The position numbers and the translations under genes are program-made. The notes below the pieces were generated by a model. The model was given only the letters and a program-made list of their open reading frames with translations, did no database searches and had not been told where the DNA came from. A stretch of 64,000 bases of DNA from contig NIVC01001484.1 in the NCBI GenBank assembly GCA_002269645.1, positions 111,531 to 175,530 of the forward strand. The letters run 5' to 3'. Below are positions 13,190 through 50,660 of this stretch, piece after piece (position 1 is the stretch's first letter; each line of letters starts with the position of its first letter). The DNA is from Macrostomum lignano (Eukaryota).

Positions 13190-15532
13190 TCAGTAGGGTC
13201 TCGGAAGATGCAAAATATTTCCACAATTGCGACACATAAAATTCGATGAGTCTCTTTTCAAATATGTATCCACATGGACACGACATCTCGTGCACCGCAT
13301 GAACTGAATCTGTGCACTCCCAGGTCGGCTCACAGAGCCACGCTTTGGAGAAGGGGCTACTTCTGGAAGACTGTCAAGTTCTTTGCACTTTCTGCCTGTA
13401 TGCACATCTTCCCAAGGCCGGCCGCACATCTTGCAAGTGTGCTTGTAGCAATTAAAGCACTGAAAACCAACAGGTTTAATAGGGCCCGTAATGGCTCTGT
13501 ACTTGCCGCAGTGAGCGCATTGCGGTTTCGTCCCAGCCTTTTGAGCTTTCATTCTGCAAGTAACTCGAGTAGACGAAATTTTTGGCTCATCAAACTCATC
13601 AGATTCATCAGATGTATTTGCCTTCTCAATGTCATTTTCAGGGCCATAAATCCCATTAAGCAACTTTTCAGCAGCATCAACAGGCTCAGAATCCTCAACT
13701 CGCCTCGCTGAAACTGTTGCCGAAGATTCAGCACGGGATGGAAATGAGCTCGCATGGGCCTCAAACTGCAGACCGCTGGCATGAGTAACCGCTGCCATCT
13801 GCCAGGCCGTATCATCTGCCCTTCTCTGCCTCGCTTCGTCACCTTGATATATTCTGGGATTTTCATCCAGCGGCACCTGCTTACCTCTTTGCAGCCTCGT
13901 CTTTCTGATCAGCTGCAGGTCATTCTGCATGGCTTCAGCCGCTTGCTCTTGGCGCAGCCGCTCTTCCTCTGCCCTTTCCCATCGCCCTACTGCTGCCGAC
14001 GCGTTCCGCAGAGATTGGTTTCTTCGTTGTCGCTCAGCCTCCTCTCTCTCCCACAGTCGCTGCGCCTCTTCTGTCTCCTTTCTCAACCGCTCAGCCTCTT
14101 CTCTCTCCCACAGTCGCTGCGCCTCTTCTGTATCCTTTCTCAACCGCTCAGCCTCTTCTCTCTCCCACAGTCGCTGCGCCTCTTCTCTCTCCTTTCTCAA
14201 CCGCTCAGCCTCTTCTCTCTCCCACAGTCGCTGCGCCTCTTCTCTCTCCTTTCTCAACCGCTCAGCCTCTTCTCTCTCCTTTCTCAACCGCTCAGCCTCT
14301 TCTCTCTCCTTTCTCCACCGGTCAGCCTCTTCTCTCTGCTGTCTCAACCGGTCAGCCTCTTCTCTCTCCTTTCTCAACCGGTCAGCCTCTTCTCTCTGCT
14401 GTCTCAACCGGTCAGCCTCTTCTCTCTTCTTTCTCAACCGATTAGCCTCTTCTCTCTCCTTTCTCAACCGCTCAGCCTCTTCTCTCTCCTTTCTCAACCG
14501 CTCAGCATCTTCTCTCTCCTTTCTCAACCGCTCAGCCTCTTCTCTCTCCTTTCTCAACCGCTCAGCATCTTCTCTCTCCTTTCTCAACCGCTCAGCCTCT
14601 TCTCTCTCCTTTCTCAACCGCTCAGCCTCTTCTCTCTGCAGTCTCAACCGCTCAGCCTCTTCCTTCTCTTTTTTCTTTCGTTCCACCTCTTCTCTTCTCT
14701 TCCGTTGTCGCAATTCTTCAGCTTCTCTCTGCCTCCTCTTATCATCCTCGATTCTCGCTTGCCTTTCGAGTTCTTCTCTTTTTTCTCTCTCCAGCCGCTG
14801 CTCCTCCAACATTGCCAACTCCAGCCGCTGCCTTTCCGTGGCTTCCTTCTCGAAACGCCTCTCTGTACAAAGTCTCTGCTCCTGCTCTTCTTTCAGCCGT
14901 GTCTGCAGCTCCTGTATTTGCTGCTCTCTTTTCTGCAGCTGAGTGTGCAGTTCTCTTCTTTCCTCCTCGGATTCTTTCAGTAAAGCCTGTAAGTTATGCA
15001 GCTTTGCAGAACTTCGAACCGCAGATCCTTGTAAATCGGCCTCCTTAGCCTCGAGCTGCAGCTTTAACTGGCCAAGCTGATCAGTCAGCTCAGCAATTCT
15101 CCCTGAGTCCTGTCTGATCTGCTCCGCTACTCTATCAGAGCACACGATGCCGTCAACGCGGAAAAACTCAGCGCTCTCGGTCTCGCACACTAAGCACGCC
15201 AAGTACTGCGAATCCGAGTTGGTCAAAACATGCTGGTTTTCCGAAAATGGGCAGTGCCTGCACGTCCAGGACACGATGGCTGCGCCAGCCAGGTGAACCT
15301 GAAAATTGTGCGATGCTACTCATTAAATATAAACTCAGATCAGTGATAACATTCACTCAGCCCAGCACGAGCTGCTCACCGATCTGCGATGCAGCCGCCG
15401 CTCCTCAGTCTGCTGGTGCCAGTCGGTGTCGCAGGTGTCGCACAGCAGCTGACCGCGGCACTCAGCGCAGGCGAGCACTGCGGGCCGGCTGTTGCAGCGG
15501 CTGCACAGCTGGGGCGGGCTGTCCGCTGACAT
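13190..15532 (-). CDS. HOIP-derived family A, copy 1: B-box, long-loop NZF, coiled coil/ER-K repeat rod, IBR, degenerate half-RING2
   Basis: Exon 1 15532-15380 (MSADSPPQLCSRC..LLCDTCDTDWHQ, donor GTGAGC) splices in phase 0 to exon 2 15298-13190 (acceptor TTTTCAG; VHLAGAAIVSWTCRHC). C-terminal CAHCG..FQCFNC..TCKMCGRPWEDVHTGRKC aligns to the IBR of the HOIP at 46 kb. Confidence 0.8.
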
Positions 15533-15977
15533 GCCGCATGAACGGGTGAAACATTTGATTGAGAAAAATGCTGCCAATCTTGCCTTGAGCACAAAAATGA
15601 TAGCCTAGCAGGCCGATAACCGAAATTGATTATGAATGAAGAATAAAGTCTTAACGCAACTTTTTGATAAATTATAATTGGCAATCAATATTTATTGTAA
15701 ACTGTAGCAGTCTGTATCAAATACTGTCAGCAAAAAAAATAATTAAATACTGAACTGGATTAATCGCATAATTAAAAATGTAAAACTGACAGCCGCCTAT
15801 TGGCTTTTGAACACAATTTAAAAAACTTTGGGTAAAAAGCGAGAATAGCGCAATAGCCAGTTCCTCGCCATCTGATTAGTGATTGCACAAAGTGATTACT
15901 GAAATGCTAATATTATAAGACGTATTGCAATGGAATTAGCGGACATTGGTATTGCTAGCATATGTTATGCAGCAAAA

Positions 15978-48000: not shown

Positions 48001-50660
48001 GCGAGAGTCCGCAATTTGATTGTTGCCGTCGCCGCTGTCGGCGCGACGAATTGTATCGAGCAGGCGGGCGTTTCTATCAGCGATGGCGGAAGCTTCAGAT
48101 TCTGACTGCTCTAGGGGTGCCGACGGTACGGCGGCAGATGAAGAAGACGATGATTGACGGTTCTCGCAGATCTGACAGCAGTCAGTGTCGCTGTTGACAA
48201 AAGTGCAAACTTGACACTCCCAACTGGAGGAAGAAGCTGTAGCCGATTGGCTCGTCCCAGCATCAGTGCGTTCCACTTGGTTGTAAGTGTCAAGCTCGGA
48301 AGACATGCTGCACACGGGGCAAACAGCACGATTGCTATTTTCAATAATCTTCAGGTCGCTGCGAGGGTTGTTAACAGTACAGATAGGACAGGTCCAGCTT
48401 GAATCAGCCATCTCGTGTTCTGGACCGGTTGGATCAGTTAAAGACGCGATCTGTGCTGAAGGAAGAGGCGGAGGCGAAGCTCTAGGTGTATGAAATTCAT
48501 CACACCTGCCCTGGTCGCTGTCTTCCTCACTCGCAATTCGAGCTTCTGTAGTTTCAGCTTCGAGAATTGGCGCTTCGGGCAAAGGGTGTTGCGGCGGTGG
48601 AGTCGTGGCGGAGACGGAGACGGAAAGCCAGCTGACGTTGGTACAGCGGGAGCCTGATCTGAATGCGGGCGCACTTCGAGCATTTGCATGTAAGTTAGCA
48701 GCTCTTCCTGTCGCAAGTCCAGGCTAGCTTCAACTCGTGAAATTTGACTTAGACCCTCGCGATGGCGCTCCAGGTTGTGGCTGCGGCCGTGAGAATTGGA
48801 TTCAAGAGTTTGAGTAAGGCTCTGGTGCGCTTGTTGTGTGGGTGGCCGGTAGATCTCGTTTGAACAATCATCTTGGTTACTATCATCAACAAATTTAGGT
48901 GCAGCTTTGCGTGTGGGCATTGTAGCAAAACCGTTCGAGTCCCAGTCAGGTTTTCCGAGGCTTCCACCTCCACTAGAGTACATGTTGCCTGCGATGTCCA
49001 TTGCCTCGAATTGAAGCATCTGCTGCAGCACAGTCGACTGTTGGTTAGTATGATCAGGCTGACTTGGCTCGAAGTCTTGATCCATTGGGCTGTCAGACTC
49101 TTGCGCTATCCGCTTCTCTTGTTCTTTTCTTCCTCGCTCCGCCTGTCTACTAAGCTCCTCTCGCTCCTGCTTTTGCTGCTCCTCCCTTCTTCTCTGCTGT
49201 TCACGCTCTTGTTTCGCTAGATCCTTCTGCTTTCTTTGCTGTTCTTCTTGCTCTTGTCTTTCCTGTTCTTCCTGTCTTCTCTGCTGGTCACGCTCTTTCT
49301 CTAGATCCTCCTGCTTTCTCTGCTGCTCCTTACGCTCTTGCCTCTCTTGTTCTTCCTGTCCTCTTTGCTTCTCCTCTCTTTCTTGACTCTCTGAACTTTC
49401 AGTCTCTTGCTTTTTGGTTGCTGCTGCATCAGTCTGTTGTTCTTCACGTTCGTTTGGTATTTTCAAATCATCAGATTGAACATCTGAAGATTGATCTTTC
49501 CCTTTTGACTGTTGTTGTTGCTCTGAGTCGAAGTTTGAAGCTGCTAAGCCCAACTGGGACACGTAGCTAACAGAATTTTTGCCGCCAGACGCCACTACCA
49601 AGCGCGGTTTTATTCCGGACGCTGCAGGCTCCAAGGCTGTTCTGGGCCTAGGAAGCGTGGCTATAGCCGAAGCTGTCATACTCAATGGAATCTTGCGCCT
49701 GAGCTCAACAGTATCGGCACCCTCGCGCTCGTGCCCGCGCCGACTAGGATGACCGTGCCAGCGCTGGTCGCAGCCAAGGCACAGGTGCCGCCTAGGACAG
49801 GCTTCGTTGCTGCAGACCAATGCAACAGGCTCATCACCGCATAGGTCGCAGAGTATTTGAGCTGGGGCAGATGAGGAAGGAGTCGGAGGAGGTCTTGGTT
49901 TCTGGTTCGGCTGCTGGCTCAGATCTTCAAATTGCTGAGCAGATTGCAGAGGCTTCTGTCCTGTTGATTCAGTTGCAGCCGAGGATACAGCGACACGGGG
50001 AGTTGAAAGCGGAGGCGATGGCAATGATGGAAGAGTGGCCGTTCTGCGCTGAATACCAGAGGGTTCCTTCTGAGCAGGCAGTTCACTCTCCTGCACAATC
50101 AGCAGCGGGTTTGTTGTTATGTGGGTCTGTTGCTGCCGCTGTTCAAGCTGTCCTGCAGCGGATGTATAGGATTTAATAACGTCCATTCGCGGATGCTGTC
50201 CGCTAAGATACAAGGACAATTCCTCGGTTACCATGGACACATCTACCAGAAAGTCGACAACAGATTGCACTGTGATGCGATCCTCATTAGCAATAAAATT
50301 TTCGCCGCAAAGAACAAAGCCAATAGTTTCAAGGAGTTTGGCGGCGTTAGGCAACGAGCGAAGATAGCTGGCTTTCATGACTGACCAATCAGTGCTGCGG
50401 TCCTCCCGCGGCAGCAGCAGCTGCTTCATTTTATTGCGCAGCAGGGTGCACGCAGACCGTACATTGCTAAGCTTGCCCCGTACATTTTGCAGGAGTACAG
50501 ATACACTTATTGGCTGGTATTTCATTTCTAAGTCGCAGTCAATGCTGATTAGCTCAGCCATTTCATCGGGCTGCGGAAGGCGGCGGTCTTTTTTGACAAT
50601 TCTTATCAGCACATTGCGGGCATTCCTAACTGACACCTCCATGGGAGTGCCTGAAGCCAT
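45081..50660 (-). CDS. RNF31: Full-length HOIP/RNF31-like linear-ubiquitin RBR E3 ligase
   Basis: PUB-like N-terminus (LVDVSMVTEELSLYLSGQHP); B-box (CDQRWHGHPSRRGH); two NZFs; UBA region (AFSQHEV..RRRERAVQEL); RING1; IBR; RING2 ECPACHFKYALAGGGCLHFVC; LDD (HPRSCLYHLRD, KVMEQKE, HYSEYLVTLIN). Clear exons: 47053+, 46186-45732, 45429-45081. The junction between the two large upstream ORFs (48438-48723) is unresolved. Confidence 0.88.
45541..45690 (+). mobile_element. 5'-truncated copy of the SINE at 35081, in the last HOIP intron
   Basis: CAGTTCACCCAGCTGTAAAA..GGCCCAA matches 35186-35346 with an internal deletion. Confidence 0.8.
46318..47036. repeat. 21-bp intronic minisatellite (GTAGCTACTTCTGATTTACTA) in the HOIP intron 46187-47052
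   Basis: Tandem array; a block restarts at a 356-bp offset (46357 vs 46713). Confidence 0.96.

What the first reader, a model, noticed from the sequence alone, without database searches (positions are those of the whole stretch)
13190..50660. A 'dismembered HOIP' cluster: one active linear-ubiquitin ligase plus eight catalytically dead, modular derivatives
Seen: nine co-oriented genes share HOIP-type B-box (C-x2-C..WHGHP) and/or NZF modules. Only the most 5' gene keeps the RING2 GCLH motif. The rest hold complementary pieces: RING1 + dead RING2 + LDD (36.5-38.6 kb), IBR + half RING2 on long rods (three copies), and B-box/NZF-only or NZF-like minis (four copies). Established: HOIP/RNF31 (Drosophila LUBEL) is normally a single-copy catalytic LUBAC subunit for Met1 chains in immune and cell-death signalling. 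Inference: a lineage-specific set of decoys, adaptors or trans-acting subunits that tune or replace LUBAC partners, with immune-gene-like birth-and-death evolution. I do not know of such an array being described.
Basis: partly seen in the sequence, partly recalled or inferred. Interest (0 to 1): 0.9.

Follow-up and report, generated by a model that had tools for sequence, protein, structure and literature searches.

The report
HOIP-derived gene array in a flatworm
Next to its linear-ubiquitin ligase gene HOIP, the flatworm Macrostomum lignano carries a tandem set of HOIP-derived genes that lack the catalytic site but keep zinc-finger and ubiquitin-binding-type modules. The array is real, lineage-specific and at least partly transcribed, but its function is untested.

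Summary
The window is Macrostomum lignano contig NIVC01001484.1 (assembly Mlig_3_7). Nine co-oriented minus-strand genes or ORFs between 13190 and 50660 share HOIP-type modules:
- a full HOIP;
- a 713-aa pseudo-ligase with B-box, NZF, RING1, no IBR, RING2 with Cys885→Ala, Arg935/Asp936→Lys/Asn, and an LDD;
- three B-box–NZF–coiled-coil–IBR genes;
- two 224-aa B-box+NZF genes;
- two 353/354-aa NZF-like ORFs.

- As assembled, the window's HOIP has a 1-nt frameshift at about 48604.
- Copies A and B and the "NZF minis" each have an upstream B-box exon.
- The "half RING2" is a C4 ribbon with no detectable RING2 similarity.
- The "rods" are a coding 30-bp minisatellite.
- The last six genes are about 2.3 copies of a 9–10 kb tandem unit.

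A homeologous contig carries the first part of the same array, up to the end of the stretch I could fetch, with structural differences. HOIP, the pseudo-ligase and gene C evolve under purifying selection (dN/dS ≈ 0.3). The young duplicates are near neutral. M. lignano also has a second, paralogous cluster with active HOIPs and another dead HOIP-like gene, so HOIP is not single-copy here. No other organism in 1.84 billion representative proteins has a close match. The function, probably non-catalytic adaptors or competitors, is inferred only.

The parts
45081..50660 (-). HOIP/RNF31 ortholog (annotated as Mlig012393g1). Exons are 50660..47053, 46186..45732 and 45429..45081. Domain order is a PUB-like N-terminus, B-box (~49850-49731), E/Q/R-rich coiled coil, NZF1 (48396-48310), NZF2 (48222-48166), HOIP UBA, RING1, IBR, RING2 (Cys codon 45874-45872) and LDD. 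A 1-nt deletion at ~48604 breaks the frame.
   Evidence: The deposited product P0049 (720 aa) starts downstream of the frameshift. dN/dS against the homeolog is 0.29.
39700..44901 (.). A 5.2-kb satellite (20-bp unit, about 259 copies) that fills the spacer between HOIP and the pseudo-ligase gene.
   Evidence: It is also present in the homeologous contig.
36484..38625 (-). Intronless HOIP-derived pseudo-ligase (713-aa ORF; the annotated product is 697 aa from Met17 at 38577). It has a B-box (38493-38374), a long-loop NZF with the T-F dipeptide (from 38130), a pre-RING1 helix and RING1 (37404-37243), no IBR, a RING2 with Cys885→Ala (36972-36970) and His887 kept, Arg935/Asp936→Lys/Asn, and the LDD C-terminal zinc ligands plus HYKEYL.
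   Evidence: dN/dS against the homeolog is 0.31 over the diverged 3' half.
32495..34900 (-). Coiled-coil gene C (801 aa, single exon). It has a HOIP-type B-box (60-65% identical to the window HOIP B-box), a long-loop NZF, a short NZF, a coiled coil with 9.6 copies of the 30-bp repeat, an IBR (32830-32687) and a terminal C4 zinc ribbon (32599-32528).
   Evidence: N-terminal 421 codons against the homeolog give dN/dS 0.33, p = 2.6e-5.
30101..31165 (-). NZF-like ORF, copy B (354 aa). The ATG directly follows an AG acceptor. It is not annotated.
28625..29815 (-). Mariner/Mos1-type transposase remnant inserted in tandem unit B only.
   Evidence: HTH_48, E = 3.7e-7; ORFs.
25629..27591 (-). B-box+NZF gene, copy B (224 aa). 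Exon 1 is 27591..27442 (B-box). The intron holds a 34-bp satellite. Exon 2 is 26153..25629 (NZF with T-F, coiled coil, acidic tail).
22028..25246 (-). Coiled-coil gene B (1045 aa). Exon 1 is 25246..25094 (diverged B-box), the intron is 81 nt, and exon 2 is 25012..22028 (NZF-like, a C-type middle segment, 36.6 repeat copies, IBR, C4 ribbon). It is a mosaic of A-type 5' and C-type middle parts.
   Evidence: The partial annotated product is P0002.
19671..20732 (-). NZF-like ORF, copy A (353 aa).
   Evidence: The ORF is 3.0% diverged between copies with one in-frame indel. The 5' flank is 9.1% diverged with 17 indels.
15978..17464 (-). B-box+NZF gene, copy A (224 aa). Exon 1 is 17464..17315, the intron holds a 34-bp satellite (16684-17318), and exon 2 is 16502..15978.
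13190..15532 (-). Coiled-coil gene A (753 aa). Exon 1 is 15532..15380 (diverged B-box), the intron is 15379..15299, and exon 2 is 15298..13190 (NZF-like, 21.5 repeat copies, IBR, C4 ribbon).
   Evidence: Its 3' part is used in the chimeric annotated model P0001.

Best explanation
What it is (shown): a Macrostomum-specific tandem family of genes derived from HOIP, lying directly downstream of a HOIP gene and on the same strand. It was built in two phases.
- Old partial duplications produced a pseudo-ligase (RING1 + dead RING2 + LDD, no IBR) and B-box–NZF–coiled-coil–IBR genes.
- Recent unequal crossing-over then multiplied a 9-10 kb unit holding an NZF-like ORF, a B-box+NZF gene and a coiled-coil gene, and shuffled parts between copies.

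How it most likely works (inferred): none of the derivatives can form the ubiquitin thioester, so they are non-catalytic.
- Several keep NZF fingers with the T-F dipeptide used for ubiquitin binding, and all but the two NZF-like ORFs keep the HOIP B-box.
- The pseudo-ligase also keeps a HOIP-like RING1, the E2-docking domain.
- The coiled-coil genes add long oligomerising rods of variable length.
- They should therefore be drawn to the same ubiquitin-decorated platforms, and possibly the same E2, as HOIP. There they would act as scaffolds or competitors that tune Met1-ubiquitin signalling. These are roles that HOIL-1L, SHARPIN and NEMO-type adaptors play in vertebrates.

The youngest copies are probably redundant and partly decaying.
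For: Origin from HOIP:
- RING1 and RING2-LDD of the 713-aa protein match only RNF31 chains in the PDB.
- Pfam LDD is above its cut-off.
- Foldseek with the model returns HOIP RBR as the top hits (E = 2.8e-5). Its confident RING1 superposes on HOIP RING1 bound to UBE2L3 (rmsd 1.8 Å, TM 0.66).
- The IBR of gene C matches the RNF31 IBR and no other RBR IBR in the PDB.
- The B-boxes of gene C and the 713-aa protein are 50-65% identical to the window HOIP B-box. They share the Macrostomum-specific C-x4-C-x-R-x2-LC insertion.
- The long-loop NZF is shared with other M. lignano HOIPs.

Loss of catalysis:
- Alignment shows Cys885→Ala and Arg935/Asp936→Lys/Asn in the 713-aa protein, and no RING2 Cys in the others.
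- Every non-Macrostomum full-length hit with a RING2 region keeps GGC[MI]HF, apart from one apparently mispredicted model (P0038).

Reality and expression:
- The order HOIP, pseudo-ligase, C-type gene, NZF-like ORF, B-box+NZF gene, A/B-type gene recurs on contig NIVC01001037.1.
- The deposited models come from RNA-seq-guided assembly (PMC5730564).
- HOIP and the coiled-coil gene carry the same transcriptional-unit prefix Mlig012393.

Constraint:
- dN/dS is 0.29 for HOIP, 0.31 for the pseudo-ligase, 0.33 for the N-part of gene C and 0.47-0.53 for the C tail against other tails.
- ORFs carry only in-frame indels and are less diverged than their flanks.
- Intron position and phase are conserved between A/B and the 224-aa genes.

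A second cluster again places a HOIP near a dead RBR-LDD gene (P0009) and B-box genes.
Against: - There is no functional, interaction or expression-level data of any kind.
- Pfam calls for B-box, NZF and IBR in the derivatives are below threshold.
- The AlphaFold model of the IBR tail is unusable (pLDDT 44.6), and the RING2-LDD part of the pseudo-ligase model is of low confidence.
- Young copies evolve almost neutrally: A against B tails 0.86, N-termini 0.79, pooled 0.67 with p = 0.05.
- In the homeolog the NZF-like ORF is truncated, the B-box exon of the 224-aa gene is deleted, and the second coiled-coil gene has a deletion and a frameshift.
- The four small genes have no deposited model and no homolog in 5.8 billion proteins.
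- The annotated coiled-coil models are chimeras across copies.
- A and B have lost the T of the NZF T-F dipeptide.
- I could not check whether M. lignano lacks HOIL-1L, SHARPIN or NEMO.
Confidence: 0.55

Rival explanations
1. Neutral birth and death: most of the array is recent, functionless partial duplicates (pseudogenes in waiting), produced by unequal crossing-over in a repeat-rich neopolyploid genome. Only HOIP, and perhaps one or two old derivatives, matter.
For: - dN/dS between young copies is not distinguishable from 1: 0.86 and 0.79, with the homeolog tail against B at 1.26.
- The homeolog copies carry deletions and a frameshift.
- The small genes are unannotated and have no homologs elsewhere.
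- Copy number of the coding minisatellite varies freely.
Against: - The pseudo-ligase and gene C show dN/dS of about 0.3 with p < 1e-4.
- All zinc ligands of B-box, NZF, RING1 and IBR are kept in every window copy.
- Splice sites are kept.
- ORFs are clearly better conserved than their flanks and have no frame-breaking indels.
- A dead HOIP-like gene also persists in the old paralogous cluster.
Confidence: 0.25
2. Assembly artefact: tandem units A and B are haplotypes or homeologs wrongly placed in tandem in the redundant Mlig_3_7 assembly. The true array would then be shorter: HOIP, the pseudo-ligase, and one or two coiled-coil genes.
For: - Mlig_3_7 has 180-312 Mb of duplicated sequence (PMC5730564).
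- A-B divergence (dS about 0.05-0.07) is of the same order as the divergence between the two contigs (dS 0.04-0.11).
- Identity between the contigs is mosaic.
- Only two coiled-coil genes are visible in the part of the homeolog that could be fetched.
Against: - The unit order C-type, NZF-like ORF, B-box+NZF gene, A/B-type gene is found independently on the second contig.
- Gene C and genes A/B have unrelated 5' parts.
- B is a mosaic with a transposon insertion and different repeat numbers.
- This rival could remove at most one unit. It does not touch the main finding.
Confidence: 0.12
3. Split-enzyme reading: the pieces act in trans on HOIP's catalytic cycle. For example, the free IBR on a rod would supply or sequester the allosteric ubiquitin site, or the pseudo-ligase would pair with HOIP as an E2-loading or acceptor-positioning partner.
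For: - The domain content is complementary. The pseudo-ligase lacks exactly the IBR, and the coiled-coil genes carry an IBR but no RING1 or LDD.
- The genes are linked to HOIP and share a transcriptional-unit name with it.
Against: - No derivative has a catalytic Cys.
- The acceptor-binding Arg-Asp pair is lost in the pseudo-ligase.
- There is no precedent that I know of for trans-complementing RBR modules.
- The homeolog's second coiled-coil gene lacks the terminal ribbon.
Confidence: 0.08

Closest known systems
HOIP / RNF31 (Drosophila LUBEL), the Met1-linkage-specific RBR E3 of LUBAC
   Same: The window's 5'-most gene is a full ortholog: B-box, two NZFs, HOIP UBA, RING1-IBR-RING2 with GGC-x-H, and LDD (E = 2.9e-80 to human RNF31). 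The derivatives carry HOIP-type B-box, NZF, RING1, IBR or LDD modules.
   Different: The derivatives lack the catalytic Cys, and each lacks several HOIP domains. The pseudo-ligase has no PUB, UBA or IBR. The coiled-coil genes have no RING1, RING2 Cys or LDD. The M. lignano HOIPs also lack the zinc-finger insertion at the start of the LDD.
M. lignano cluster II (contigs NIVC01000691.1, NIVC01000110.1 and a 288,637-bp contig): Mlig024078/Mlig013308 HOIPs, Mlig033604 mini-HOIPs, Mlig011956 (P0009), Mlig005926 (P0016)
   Same: It is a co-oriented array: a HOIP, a dead RBR-LDD gene (P0009, with SKSGYSVFHC and Arg-Asp→Lys-Gln) and B-box/NZF genes. The 713-aa B-box is 70% identical to that of P0046 in that cluster.
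   Different: Cluster II also holds short, apparently active NZF+RBR+LDD genes. Its dead member keeps an IBR and has two RING1 copies. It has no counterpart of the IBR-ribbon tail. Protein identity between the clusters is only about 25-35%.
HOIL-1L (RBCK1) and SHARPIN, the NZF-bearing accessory subunits of vertebrate LUBAC
   Same: They are NZF-containing partners of HOIP that modulate its activity and recruitment. This is the functional role proposed here.
   Different: There is no sequence relationship beyond the NZF. No UBL domain is present, and HOIL-1L is itself an active RBR. The comparison is an analogy only, from general knowledge, and was not tested.
Coiled-coil ubiquitin-binding adaptors (NEMO, ABIN, optineurin)
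   Same: They combine a long coiled coil with a zinc finger or ubiquitin-binding element and work on Met1/K63 platforms.
   Different: They are unrelated in sequence. Here the rod is a 30-bp coding minisatellite and the binding modules are HOIP-derived.
Pseudoenzyme regulators in the ubiquitin system (for example the UEV proteins Uev1a/Mms2)
   Same: They are paralogs that keep the fold and partner-binding surfaces but lack the catalytic Cys, and they regulate the active enzyme.
   Different: A dead RBR-LDD paralog of HOIP has, as far as I could find, not been described.

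Membership tests
HOIP/RNF31 (window gene 45081-50660) | RING1-IBR-RING2 with a catalytic Cys followed by His (GGC-x-H) | tested here: met
   E = 2.9e-80 to the human RNF31 RBR-LDD. GGGCLHF is aligned to GGCMHF.
HOIP/RNF31 (window gene 45081-50660) | Linear ubiquitin chain determining domain (Pfam PF18091) with the Arg-Asp acceptor-binding pair | tested here: met
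   The alignment to 5edv runs through the LDD, and LRDF is retained. The 99%-identical homeolog copy P0003 is recorded with PF18091.
HOIP/RNF31 (window gene 45081-50660) | HOIP-type UBA pair (PF16678) | tested here: met
   27.4 bits against a cut-off of 22.4.
HOIP/RNF31 (window gene 45081-50660) | N-terminal PUB domain | tested here: inconclusive
   There is no Pfam PUB hit at E ≤ 1. The N-terminus aligns with those of other M. lignano HOIPs and is of the right length, but the fold was not tested.
HOIP/RNF31 (window gene 45081-50660) | Uninterrupted reading frame | tested here: not met
   A 1-nt deletion at about 48604 relative to the homeolog breaks the frame. The deposited product is only 720 aa. 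There is no other lesion, and dN/dS downstream is 0.2. It may be an assembly error.
HOIP/RNF31 as an enzyme (713-aa paralog) | Catalytic Cys in RING2 | tested here: not met
   STADHIAC is aligned to GGCMHFHC, so Cys885→Ala in the window. The homeolog has STANHIAC.
HOIP/RNF31 as an enzyme (713-aa paralog) | IBR between RING1 and RING2 | tested here: not met
   There is no Cys/His pattern and no alignment in that interval.
HOIP/RNF31 as a homologous family (713-aa paralog) | LDD (PF18091) and HOIP-like RING1 | tested here: met
   PF18091 scores 27 bits against a cut-off of 23. The PDB hits are RNF31 only. Foldseek returns HOIP RBR and HOIP RING1.
RBR E3 ligases (coiled-coil genes A, B, C) | RING1 plus IBR plus a RING2 with catalytic Cys | tested here: not met
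   Only an IBR-like domain is detectable: RNF31 IBR at E = 1.7e-4, and Pfam IBR at 15.7 bits against a cut-off of 24.3. The terminal C4 ribbon has no similarity to RING2 and no Cys at the catalytic position.
NZF (RanBP2-type) ubiquitin-binding zinc fingers | W-x-C-x2-C ... C-x2-C with the T-F dipeptide, and a Pfam PF00641 match | tested here: inconclusive
   The pattern and T-F are present in the 713-aa protein, gene C (both fingers) and the 224-aa genes. It is P-F or L-F in A/B and S-L in the NZF-like ORFs. PF00641 stays below its cut-off: 21.1, 14.8 and 9.2 bits against 27. The gene C pair matches the Vps36 NZFs at E = 4e-4. Ubiquitin binding was not tested.
HOIP-type B-box | C-x2-C-G ... 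C-x2-C-D-x2-[WYF]-H-x-[HN]-P-x-R-x2-H, as found N-terminal to the NZFs in metazoan HOIPs | tested here: met
   The motif is present in the window HOIP, the 713-aa protein and gene C (WHGHPxRxxH). It aligns with the B-boxes of HOIPs from annelid, crinoid, fish and other animals. A/B and the 224-aa genes carry diverged versions (36-47% identity; Pfam zf-B_box at 20.9 bits against a cut-off of 24.1).

The most novel reading that the evidence does not exclude
Macrostomum has built its own LUBAC-like machinery from HOIP itself. Each of two paralogous clusters places an active HOIP beside genomically linked non-catalytic HOIP derivatives that may be transcribed with it: a pseudo-RBR-LDD partner and NZF/B-box/IBR adaptors on variable coiled-coil rods. 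These would take over the recruitment and regulatory roles that unrelated proteins (HOIL-1L, SHARPIN, NEMO) fill in vertebrates. The rapidly turning-over copies could reflect conflict with pathogens.
Probability: 0.2. Interest if true: 0.7.

Novelty: new variant of a known kind. Interest (0 to 1): 0.48.

Why it matters
HOIP is the only ligase known to make Met1-linked ubiquitin chains, and it is usually studied as one gene with unrelated partners.

A lineage in which HOIP has radiated would be a natural dissection of which HOIP modules suffice for recruitment, E2 binding or regulation. Here the radiation includes active short forms, catalytically dead RBR-LDD forms and B-box/NZF/IBR-only proteins, arranged in arrays beside the active gene.

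M. lignano has transgenesis and RNAi, so the idea is testable. If the derivatives are only decaying duplicates, the locus is still a clean example of birth-and-death evolution. It is also a caution for annotation, given the chimeric models and the frameshifted HOIP.

Tried and rejected
- Exact-product look-ups for the 713-, 801- and 354-aa ORFs failed because the deposited models differ.
- The word-indexed homolog search with the small genes and the A-type N-terminus found nothing. The search with gene C found only this contig's own models.
- Pfam on isolated modules gave only sub-threshold hits.
- The AlphaFold model of the IBR-ribbon tail had pLDDT 44.6, so I did not use it for a fold search.
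- 'Half RING2' is rejected as a demonstrated homology. BLAST, PDB and Pfam show no RING2 similarity, and the best weak PDB hit is a GATA finger.
- I found no B-box exon upstream of the 353/354-aa ORFs.
- The 174-aa ORF read as a stand-alone gene is rejected in favour of a two-exon model. A spliced-leader-donated AUG remains possible, because the leader ends in ATG.
- Literature and supplement searches for HOIP in flatworms and for the gene IDs returned nothing.
- A relic of HOIP's 3' end upstream of gene C is rejected. The shared 170 bp is a dispersed element.

Full report
**Source and layout**

The RagA-type GTPase ORF at 11661-12590 is encoded on one public contig, NIVC01001484.1 of GCA_002269645.1. 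That accession is the Macrostomum lignano Mlig_3_7 assembly. All genes of the finding lie on the minus strand. The window is rich in satellites. The largest is a 5.2-kb array of a 20-bp unit at 39700-44901, between the first two genes.

**HOIP**

- Exons are 50660..47053, 46186..45732 and 45429..45081, joined at canonical GT/AG sites.
- They encode a B-box, two NZFs, a HOIP UBA pair (PF16678, 27.4 bits, cut-off 22.4), RING1, IBR, RING2 and LDD.
- The RBR-LDD aligns with human RNF31 over 333 residues at E = 2.9e-80, with GGGCLHF at the catalytic site.
- The deposited product P0049 (Mlig012393g1, 720 aa) reproduces my junctions exactly.
- It starts only at the Met before NZF1. The reason is that the window has a 1-nt deletion at about 48604 relative to the 99%-identical copy on contig NIVC01001037.1 (P0003, 1455 aa). 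Every other indel between the two copies is a multiple of three.
- dN/dS between the copies is 0.29. Downstream of the frameshift there are 7 synonymous and 5 non-synonymous changes and no further lesion.
- The frameshift is therefore either an assembly error or very recent. A third copy of 1470 aa exists on a 266-kb contig.

**The pseudo-ligase (36484-38625)**

- The 713-aa ORF has no intron. It is annotated from Met17 as 697 aa.
- Its PDB matches are RNF31 chains only, in two stretches: RING1, and RING2-LDD.
- Pfam LDD is above its cut-off (27 bits against 23).
- In a family alignment all eight RING1 ligands are present and the IBR is missing.
- The RING2 ligands C871, C874, C890, C893, C898 and C901 are present.
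- Cys885 is Ala, while His887 is kept.
- The acceptor-ubiquitin pair Arg935/Asp936 is Lys/Asn.
- The last LDD zinc site and HYKEYL are kept.
- An AlphaFold model is confident only for the pre-RING1 helices and RING1 (pLDDT 74-92).
- Foldseek returns HOIP RBR structures first (E = 2.8e-5). It also returns the HOIP RING1–UBE2L3 complex (78 columns, rmsd 1.8 Å).
- The homeolog copy (714 aa) is intact. The first 1004 nt are identical, and over the rest dS = 0.096, dN = 0.030 and dN/dS = 0.31.

**The coiled-coil genes**

- Gene C (32495-34900, 801 aa) has a B-box 60-65% identical to that of the window HOIP, and a long-loop NZF 51% identical to that of the pseudo-ligase.
- It continues with a second NZF, a coiled coil, an IBR and a C4 ribbon. 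The only RBR-type PDB match of the IBR is the RNF31 IBR (E = 1.7e-4).
- The ribbon has the C-x2-C-x16-C-x2-C spacing of the first RING2 zinc site, but no measurable similarity to RING2.
- The EREEAERLRK 'rod' is a 30-bp minisatellite of 9.6, 36.6 and 21.5 copies in C, B and A.
- Genes A and B were read by the first stage as starting at the long ORF. In fact each has a 51-codon first exon (ATG 15532 and 25246) encoding a diverged B-box. An 81-nt GT-AG intron in phase 0 follows.
- B is a mosaic of an A-type 5' part and a C-type middle part.

**The small genes**

- The 174-aa ORF starts exactly at an AG acceptor, with the same first residues (VHL) as exon 2 of gene A.
- tblastn then revealed a B-box exon at 17464-17315 and 27591-27442. 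It ends in a GTGAGC donor, in phase with the ORF, and the intron holds a 34-bp satellite.
- The product is a 224-aa B-box + NZF (with T-F) + coiled-coil protein.
- The 353/354-aa ORFs start with an ATG directly after an AG. They match the NZF pattern only loosely and have no B-box exon.
- None of the four has a deposited model. They lie inside the 'intron' of a chimeric model. None has any homolog in 5.8 billion proteins.
- Between the two copies, however, the ORFs are less diverged than their flanks and have only in-frame indels. The 353-aa ORF is 3.0% diverged with one 3-nt indel. Its 5' flank is 9.1% diverged with 17 indels, 11 of them not multiples of three.
- dN/dS is 0.45 for both small genes, with p = 0.04 and p = 0.18.

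**Array history**

- Self-alignment shows about 2.3 tandem copies of a 9-10 kb unit: A at 13179-22016, B at 22017-32483, and the 3' part of C. They are 85-97% identical.
- A mariner-type remnant occurs only in unit B.
- Tails of A and B differ by dS 0.07 with dN/dS 0.86. Against the C tail, dS is about 0.22 and dN/dS 0.53 (p = 0.004-0.005).
- Pooled over all A-B pairs, dN/dS is 0.67 (p = 0.05).

**The second contig**

- NIVC01001037.1 is colinear with the window from 58.7 kb to at least 33.8 kb, at 90-96% identity.
- It carries HOIP, the pseudo-ligase and an intact 826-aa C-type gene whose tail is A-like (91%).
- It then carries a truncated NZF-like ORF, exon 2 of the 224-aa gene without its B-box exon, and a B-type gene with an internal deletion and a frameshift before the ribbon.
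- The N-part of gene C has dN/dS 0.33 against this copy (p = 2.6e-5).
- The unit order is therefore real, but copies differ structurally between homeologs.
- The deposited 790-aa and 760-aa models join the 5' part of one copy to the tail of another. These are probably mapping chimeras, since the second contig encodes a C-type head with an A-like tail in one exon.

**Expression evidence**

The deposited annotation is an RNA-seq-guided assembly. In it, 'transcriptional units' are cut into genes at trans-splice and poly(A) sites, and many units are multi-gene precursors (PMC5730564). HOIP and the coiled-coil model share the unit prefix Mlig012393 as g1 and g3, with consecutive-range accessions. 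This suggests one long transcriptional unit, but I could not inspect reads. The spliced leader ends in ATG (PMC8629364).

**Wider family**

- M. lignano has further HOIP-like genes: P0005 (1180 aa, intronless, 34% identical) and a 1186-aa ORF on another contig. That ORF is followed by two NZF+RBR+LDD genes with intact GGCLH.
- The exhaustive search with the pseudo-ligase found 39 proteins at E ≤ 1e-3 among 1.84 billion, and only itself below 1e-30.
- The next hits are M. lignano proteins, followed by ordinary HOIPs of an annelid, a crinoid, a cephalopod and fish.
- One of the M. lignano hits, P0009 (Mlig011956g1), is a second dead HOIP-like protein. It has SKSGYSVFHC at the catalytic site, Arg-Asp→Lys-Gln, and an LDD at 38 bits.
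- P0009 lies on the same contig as P0005, co-oriented with it. A 533-aa active mini-HOIP and a B-box gene follow it.
- Among the hits with a RING2 region, every non-Macrostomum protein keeps GGC[MI]HF except P0038, which looks mispredicted.
- The Macrostomum B-boxes share an insertion (C-x4-C-x-R-x2-LC), and their first NZF shares a long loop. Both are absent from other animals' HOIPs.
- The pseudo-ligase B-box is closest (70%) to a cluster-II B-box.
- The family is thus an old Macrostomum-lineage radiation with two paralogous clusters, not a single recent accident.

**Interpretation**

Shown:
- HOIP ancestry;
- loss of the catalytic residue;
- presence on two contigs;
- purifying selection on HOIP, the pseudo-ligase and gene C;
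- rapid structural turnover of the younger units.

Inferred, from the known roles of NZF T-F fingers, of the HOIP B-box/NZF region in recruitment, and of RING1 in E2 docking:
- the derivatives are non-catalytic binders of ubiquitin platforms or of the E2;
- they scaffold or compete with HOIP.

Nothing here tests that. The neutral-decay reading fits the youngest copies well. A false tandem duplication could remove at most one unit.

**Novelty**

I found no paper on HOIP in flatworms, on HOIP paralog arrays or on dead RBR-LDD proteins. The elements are known domain types in a known family, so I file this as a new variant of a known kind, with moderate interest.

Noticed in passing
window ~48604 (minus strand, HOIP first exon): There is a single-base deletion relative to the homeologous copy (CCAC-GACT against CCACTGACT). 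It splits the HOIP ORF, and the deposited protein for this locus is only the 720-aa C-terminal part.
   Followed up: yes
window 2725-9551 (minus) and 11661-12590 (minus): Directly downstream of the array lie an intronless RagA-type GTPase gene and a 546-aa Ariadne-type RBR ligase gene (Pfam UBA_ARI1, IBR, Ariadne in the deposited product). This is a second, unrelated RBR family next to the HOIP array.
   Followed up: partly
window 16684-17318 and 26341-27445: The 34-bp satellite inside the intron of the 224-aa genes contains the exon-1 end plus the splice donor (AGGGTGAGCTTTGGGG). The array therefore seems to have grown from the exon-intron junction and offers many repeated candidate donor sites.
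   Followed up: partly
window 14031-14662, 22878-23968, 33369-33654: The coiled-coil 'rod' is a 30-bp coding minisatellite with 21.5, 36.6 and 9.6 copies. It is open in several frames on both strands, which produces long spurious ORFs on the plus strand.
   Followed up: yes
window 36484-38625 against L004 20515-22659: Identity between the two contigs is mosaic. The first 1004 nt of the pseudo-ligase gene are identical and the remaining ~1140 nt differ by 3.6%. HOIP shows dS 0.063 upstream and 0.013 downstream of ~48.6 kb. This suggests gene conversion between homeologs, or an assembly mosaic.
   Followed up: partly
window 35183-35352 and 45541-45690; L007 18861-19021 and 22438-22620: A ~170-bp element sits about 280 bp upstream of gene C and inside HOIP intron 3. 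In the other cluster it sits just upstream of two HOIP-family genes, in the opposite orientation (83-92% identity). It may be a MITE-like repeat or a shared regulatory module.
   Followed up: partly
window 28625-29815 (minus): A mariner/Mos1-type transposase remnant (HTH_48) is present in tandem unit B but not in unit A.
   Followed up: partly
window 39700-44901, 46319-47028, 18381-19552: There is a 5.2-kb 20-bp satellite between HOIP and the pseudo-ligase, a 21-bp array of 34 copies inside HOIP intron 2, and a 1.2-kb (GACA)n tract between the NZF-like ORF and the 224-aa gene. In the homeolog the (GACA)n tract is deleted together with gene parts.
   Followed up: partly
window 13190-34900 (model P0001) and L008 13897-21694: The deposited coiled-coil gene models (790 and 760 aa) are chimeras. 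They join the head of one tandem copy to the tail of another across 5-19 kb 'introns' that contain other genes.
   Followed up: yes
L005, L006, L007 (contigs NIVC01000691.1 and NIVC01000110.1): A second HOIP-family cluster exists elsewhere in the genome. It holds intronless full-length HOIPs, short NZF+RBR+LDD genes with intact catalytic motifs, another dead RBR-LDD gene with duplicated RING1 (P0009), and B-box/NZF/RING1-only genes (P0016).
   Followed up: partly
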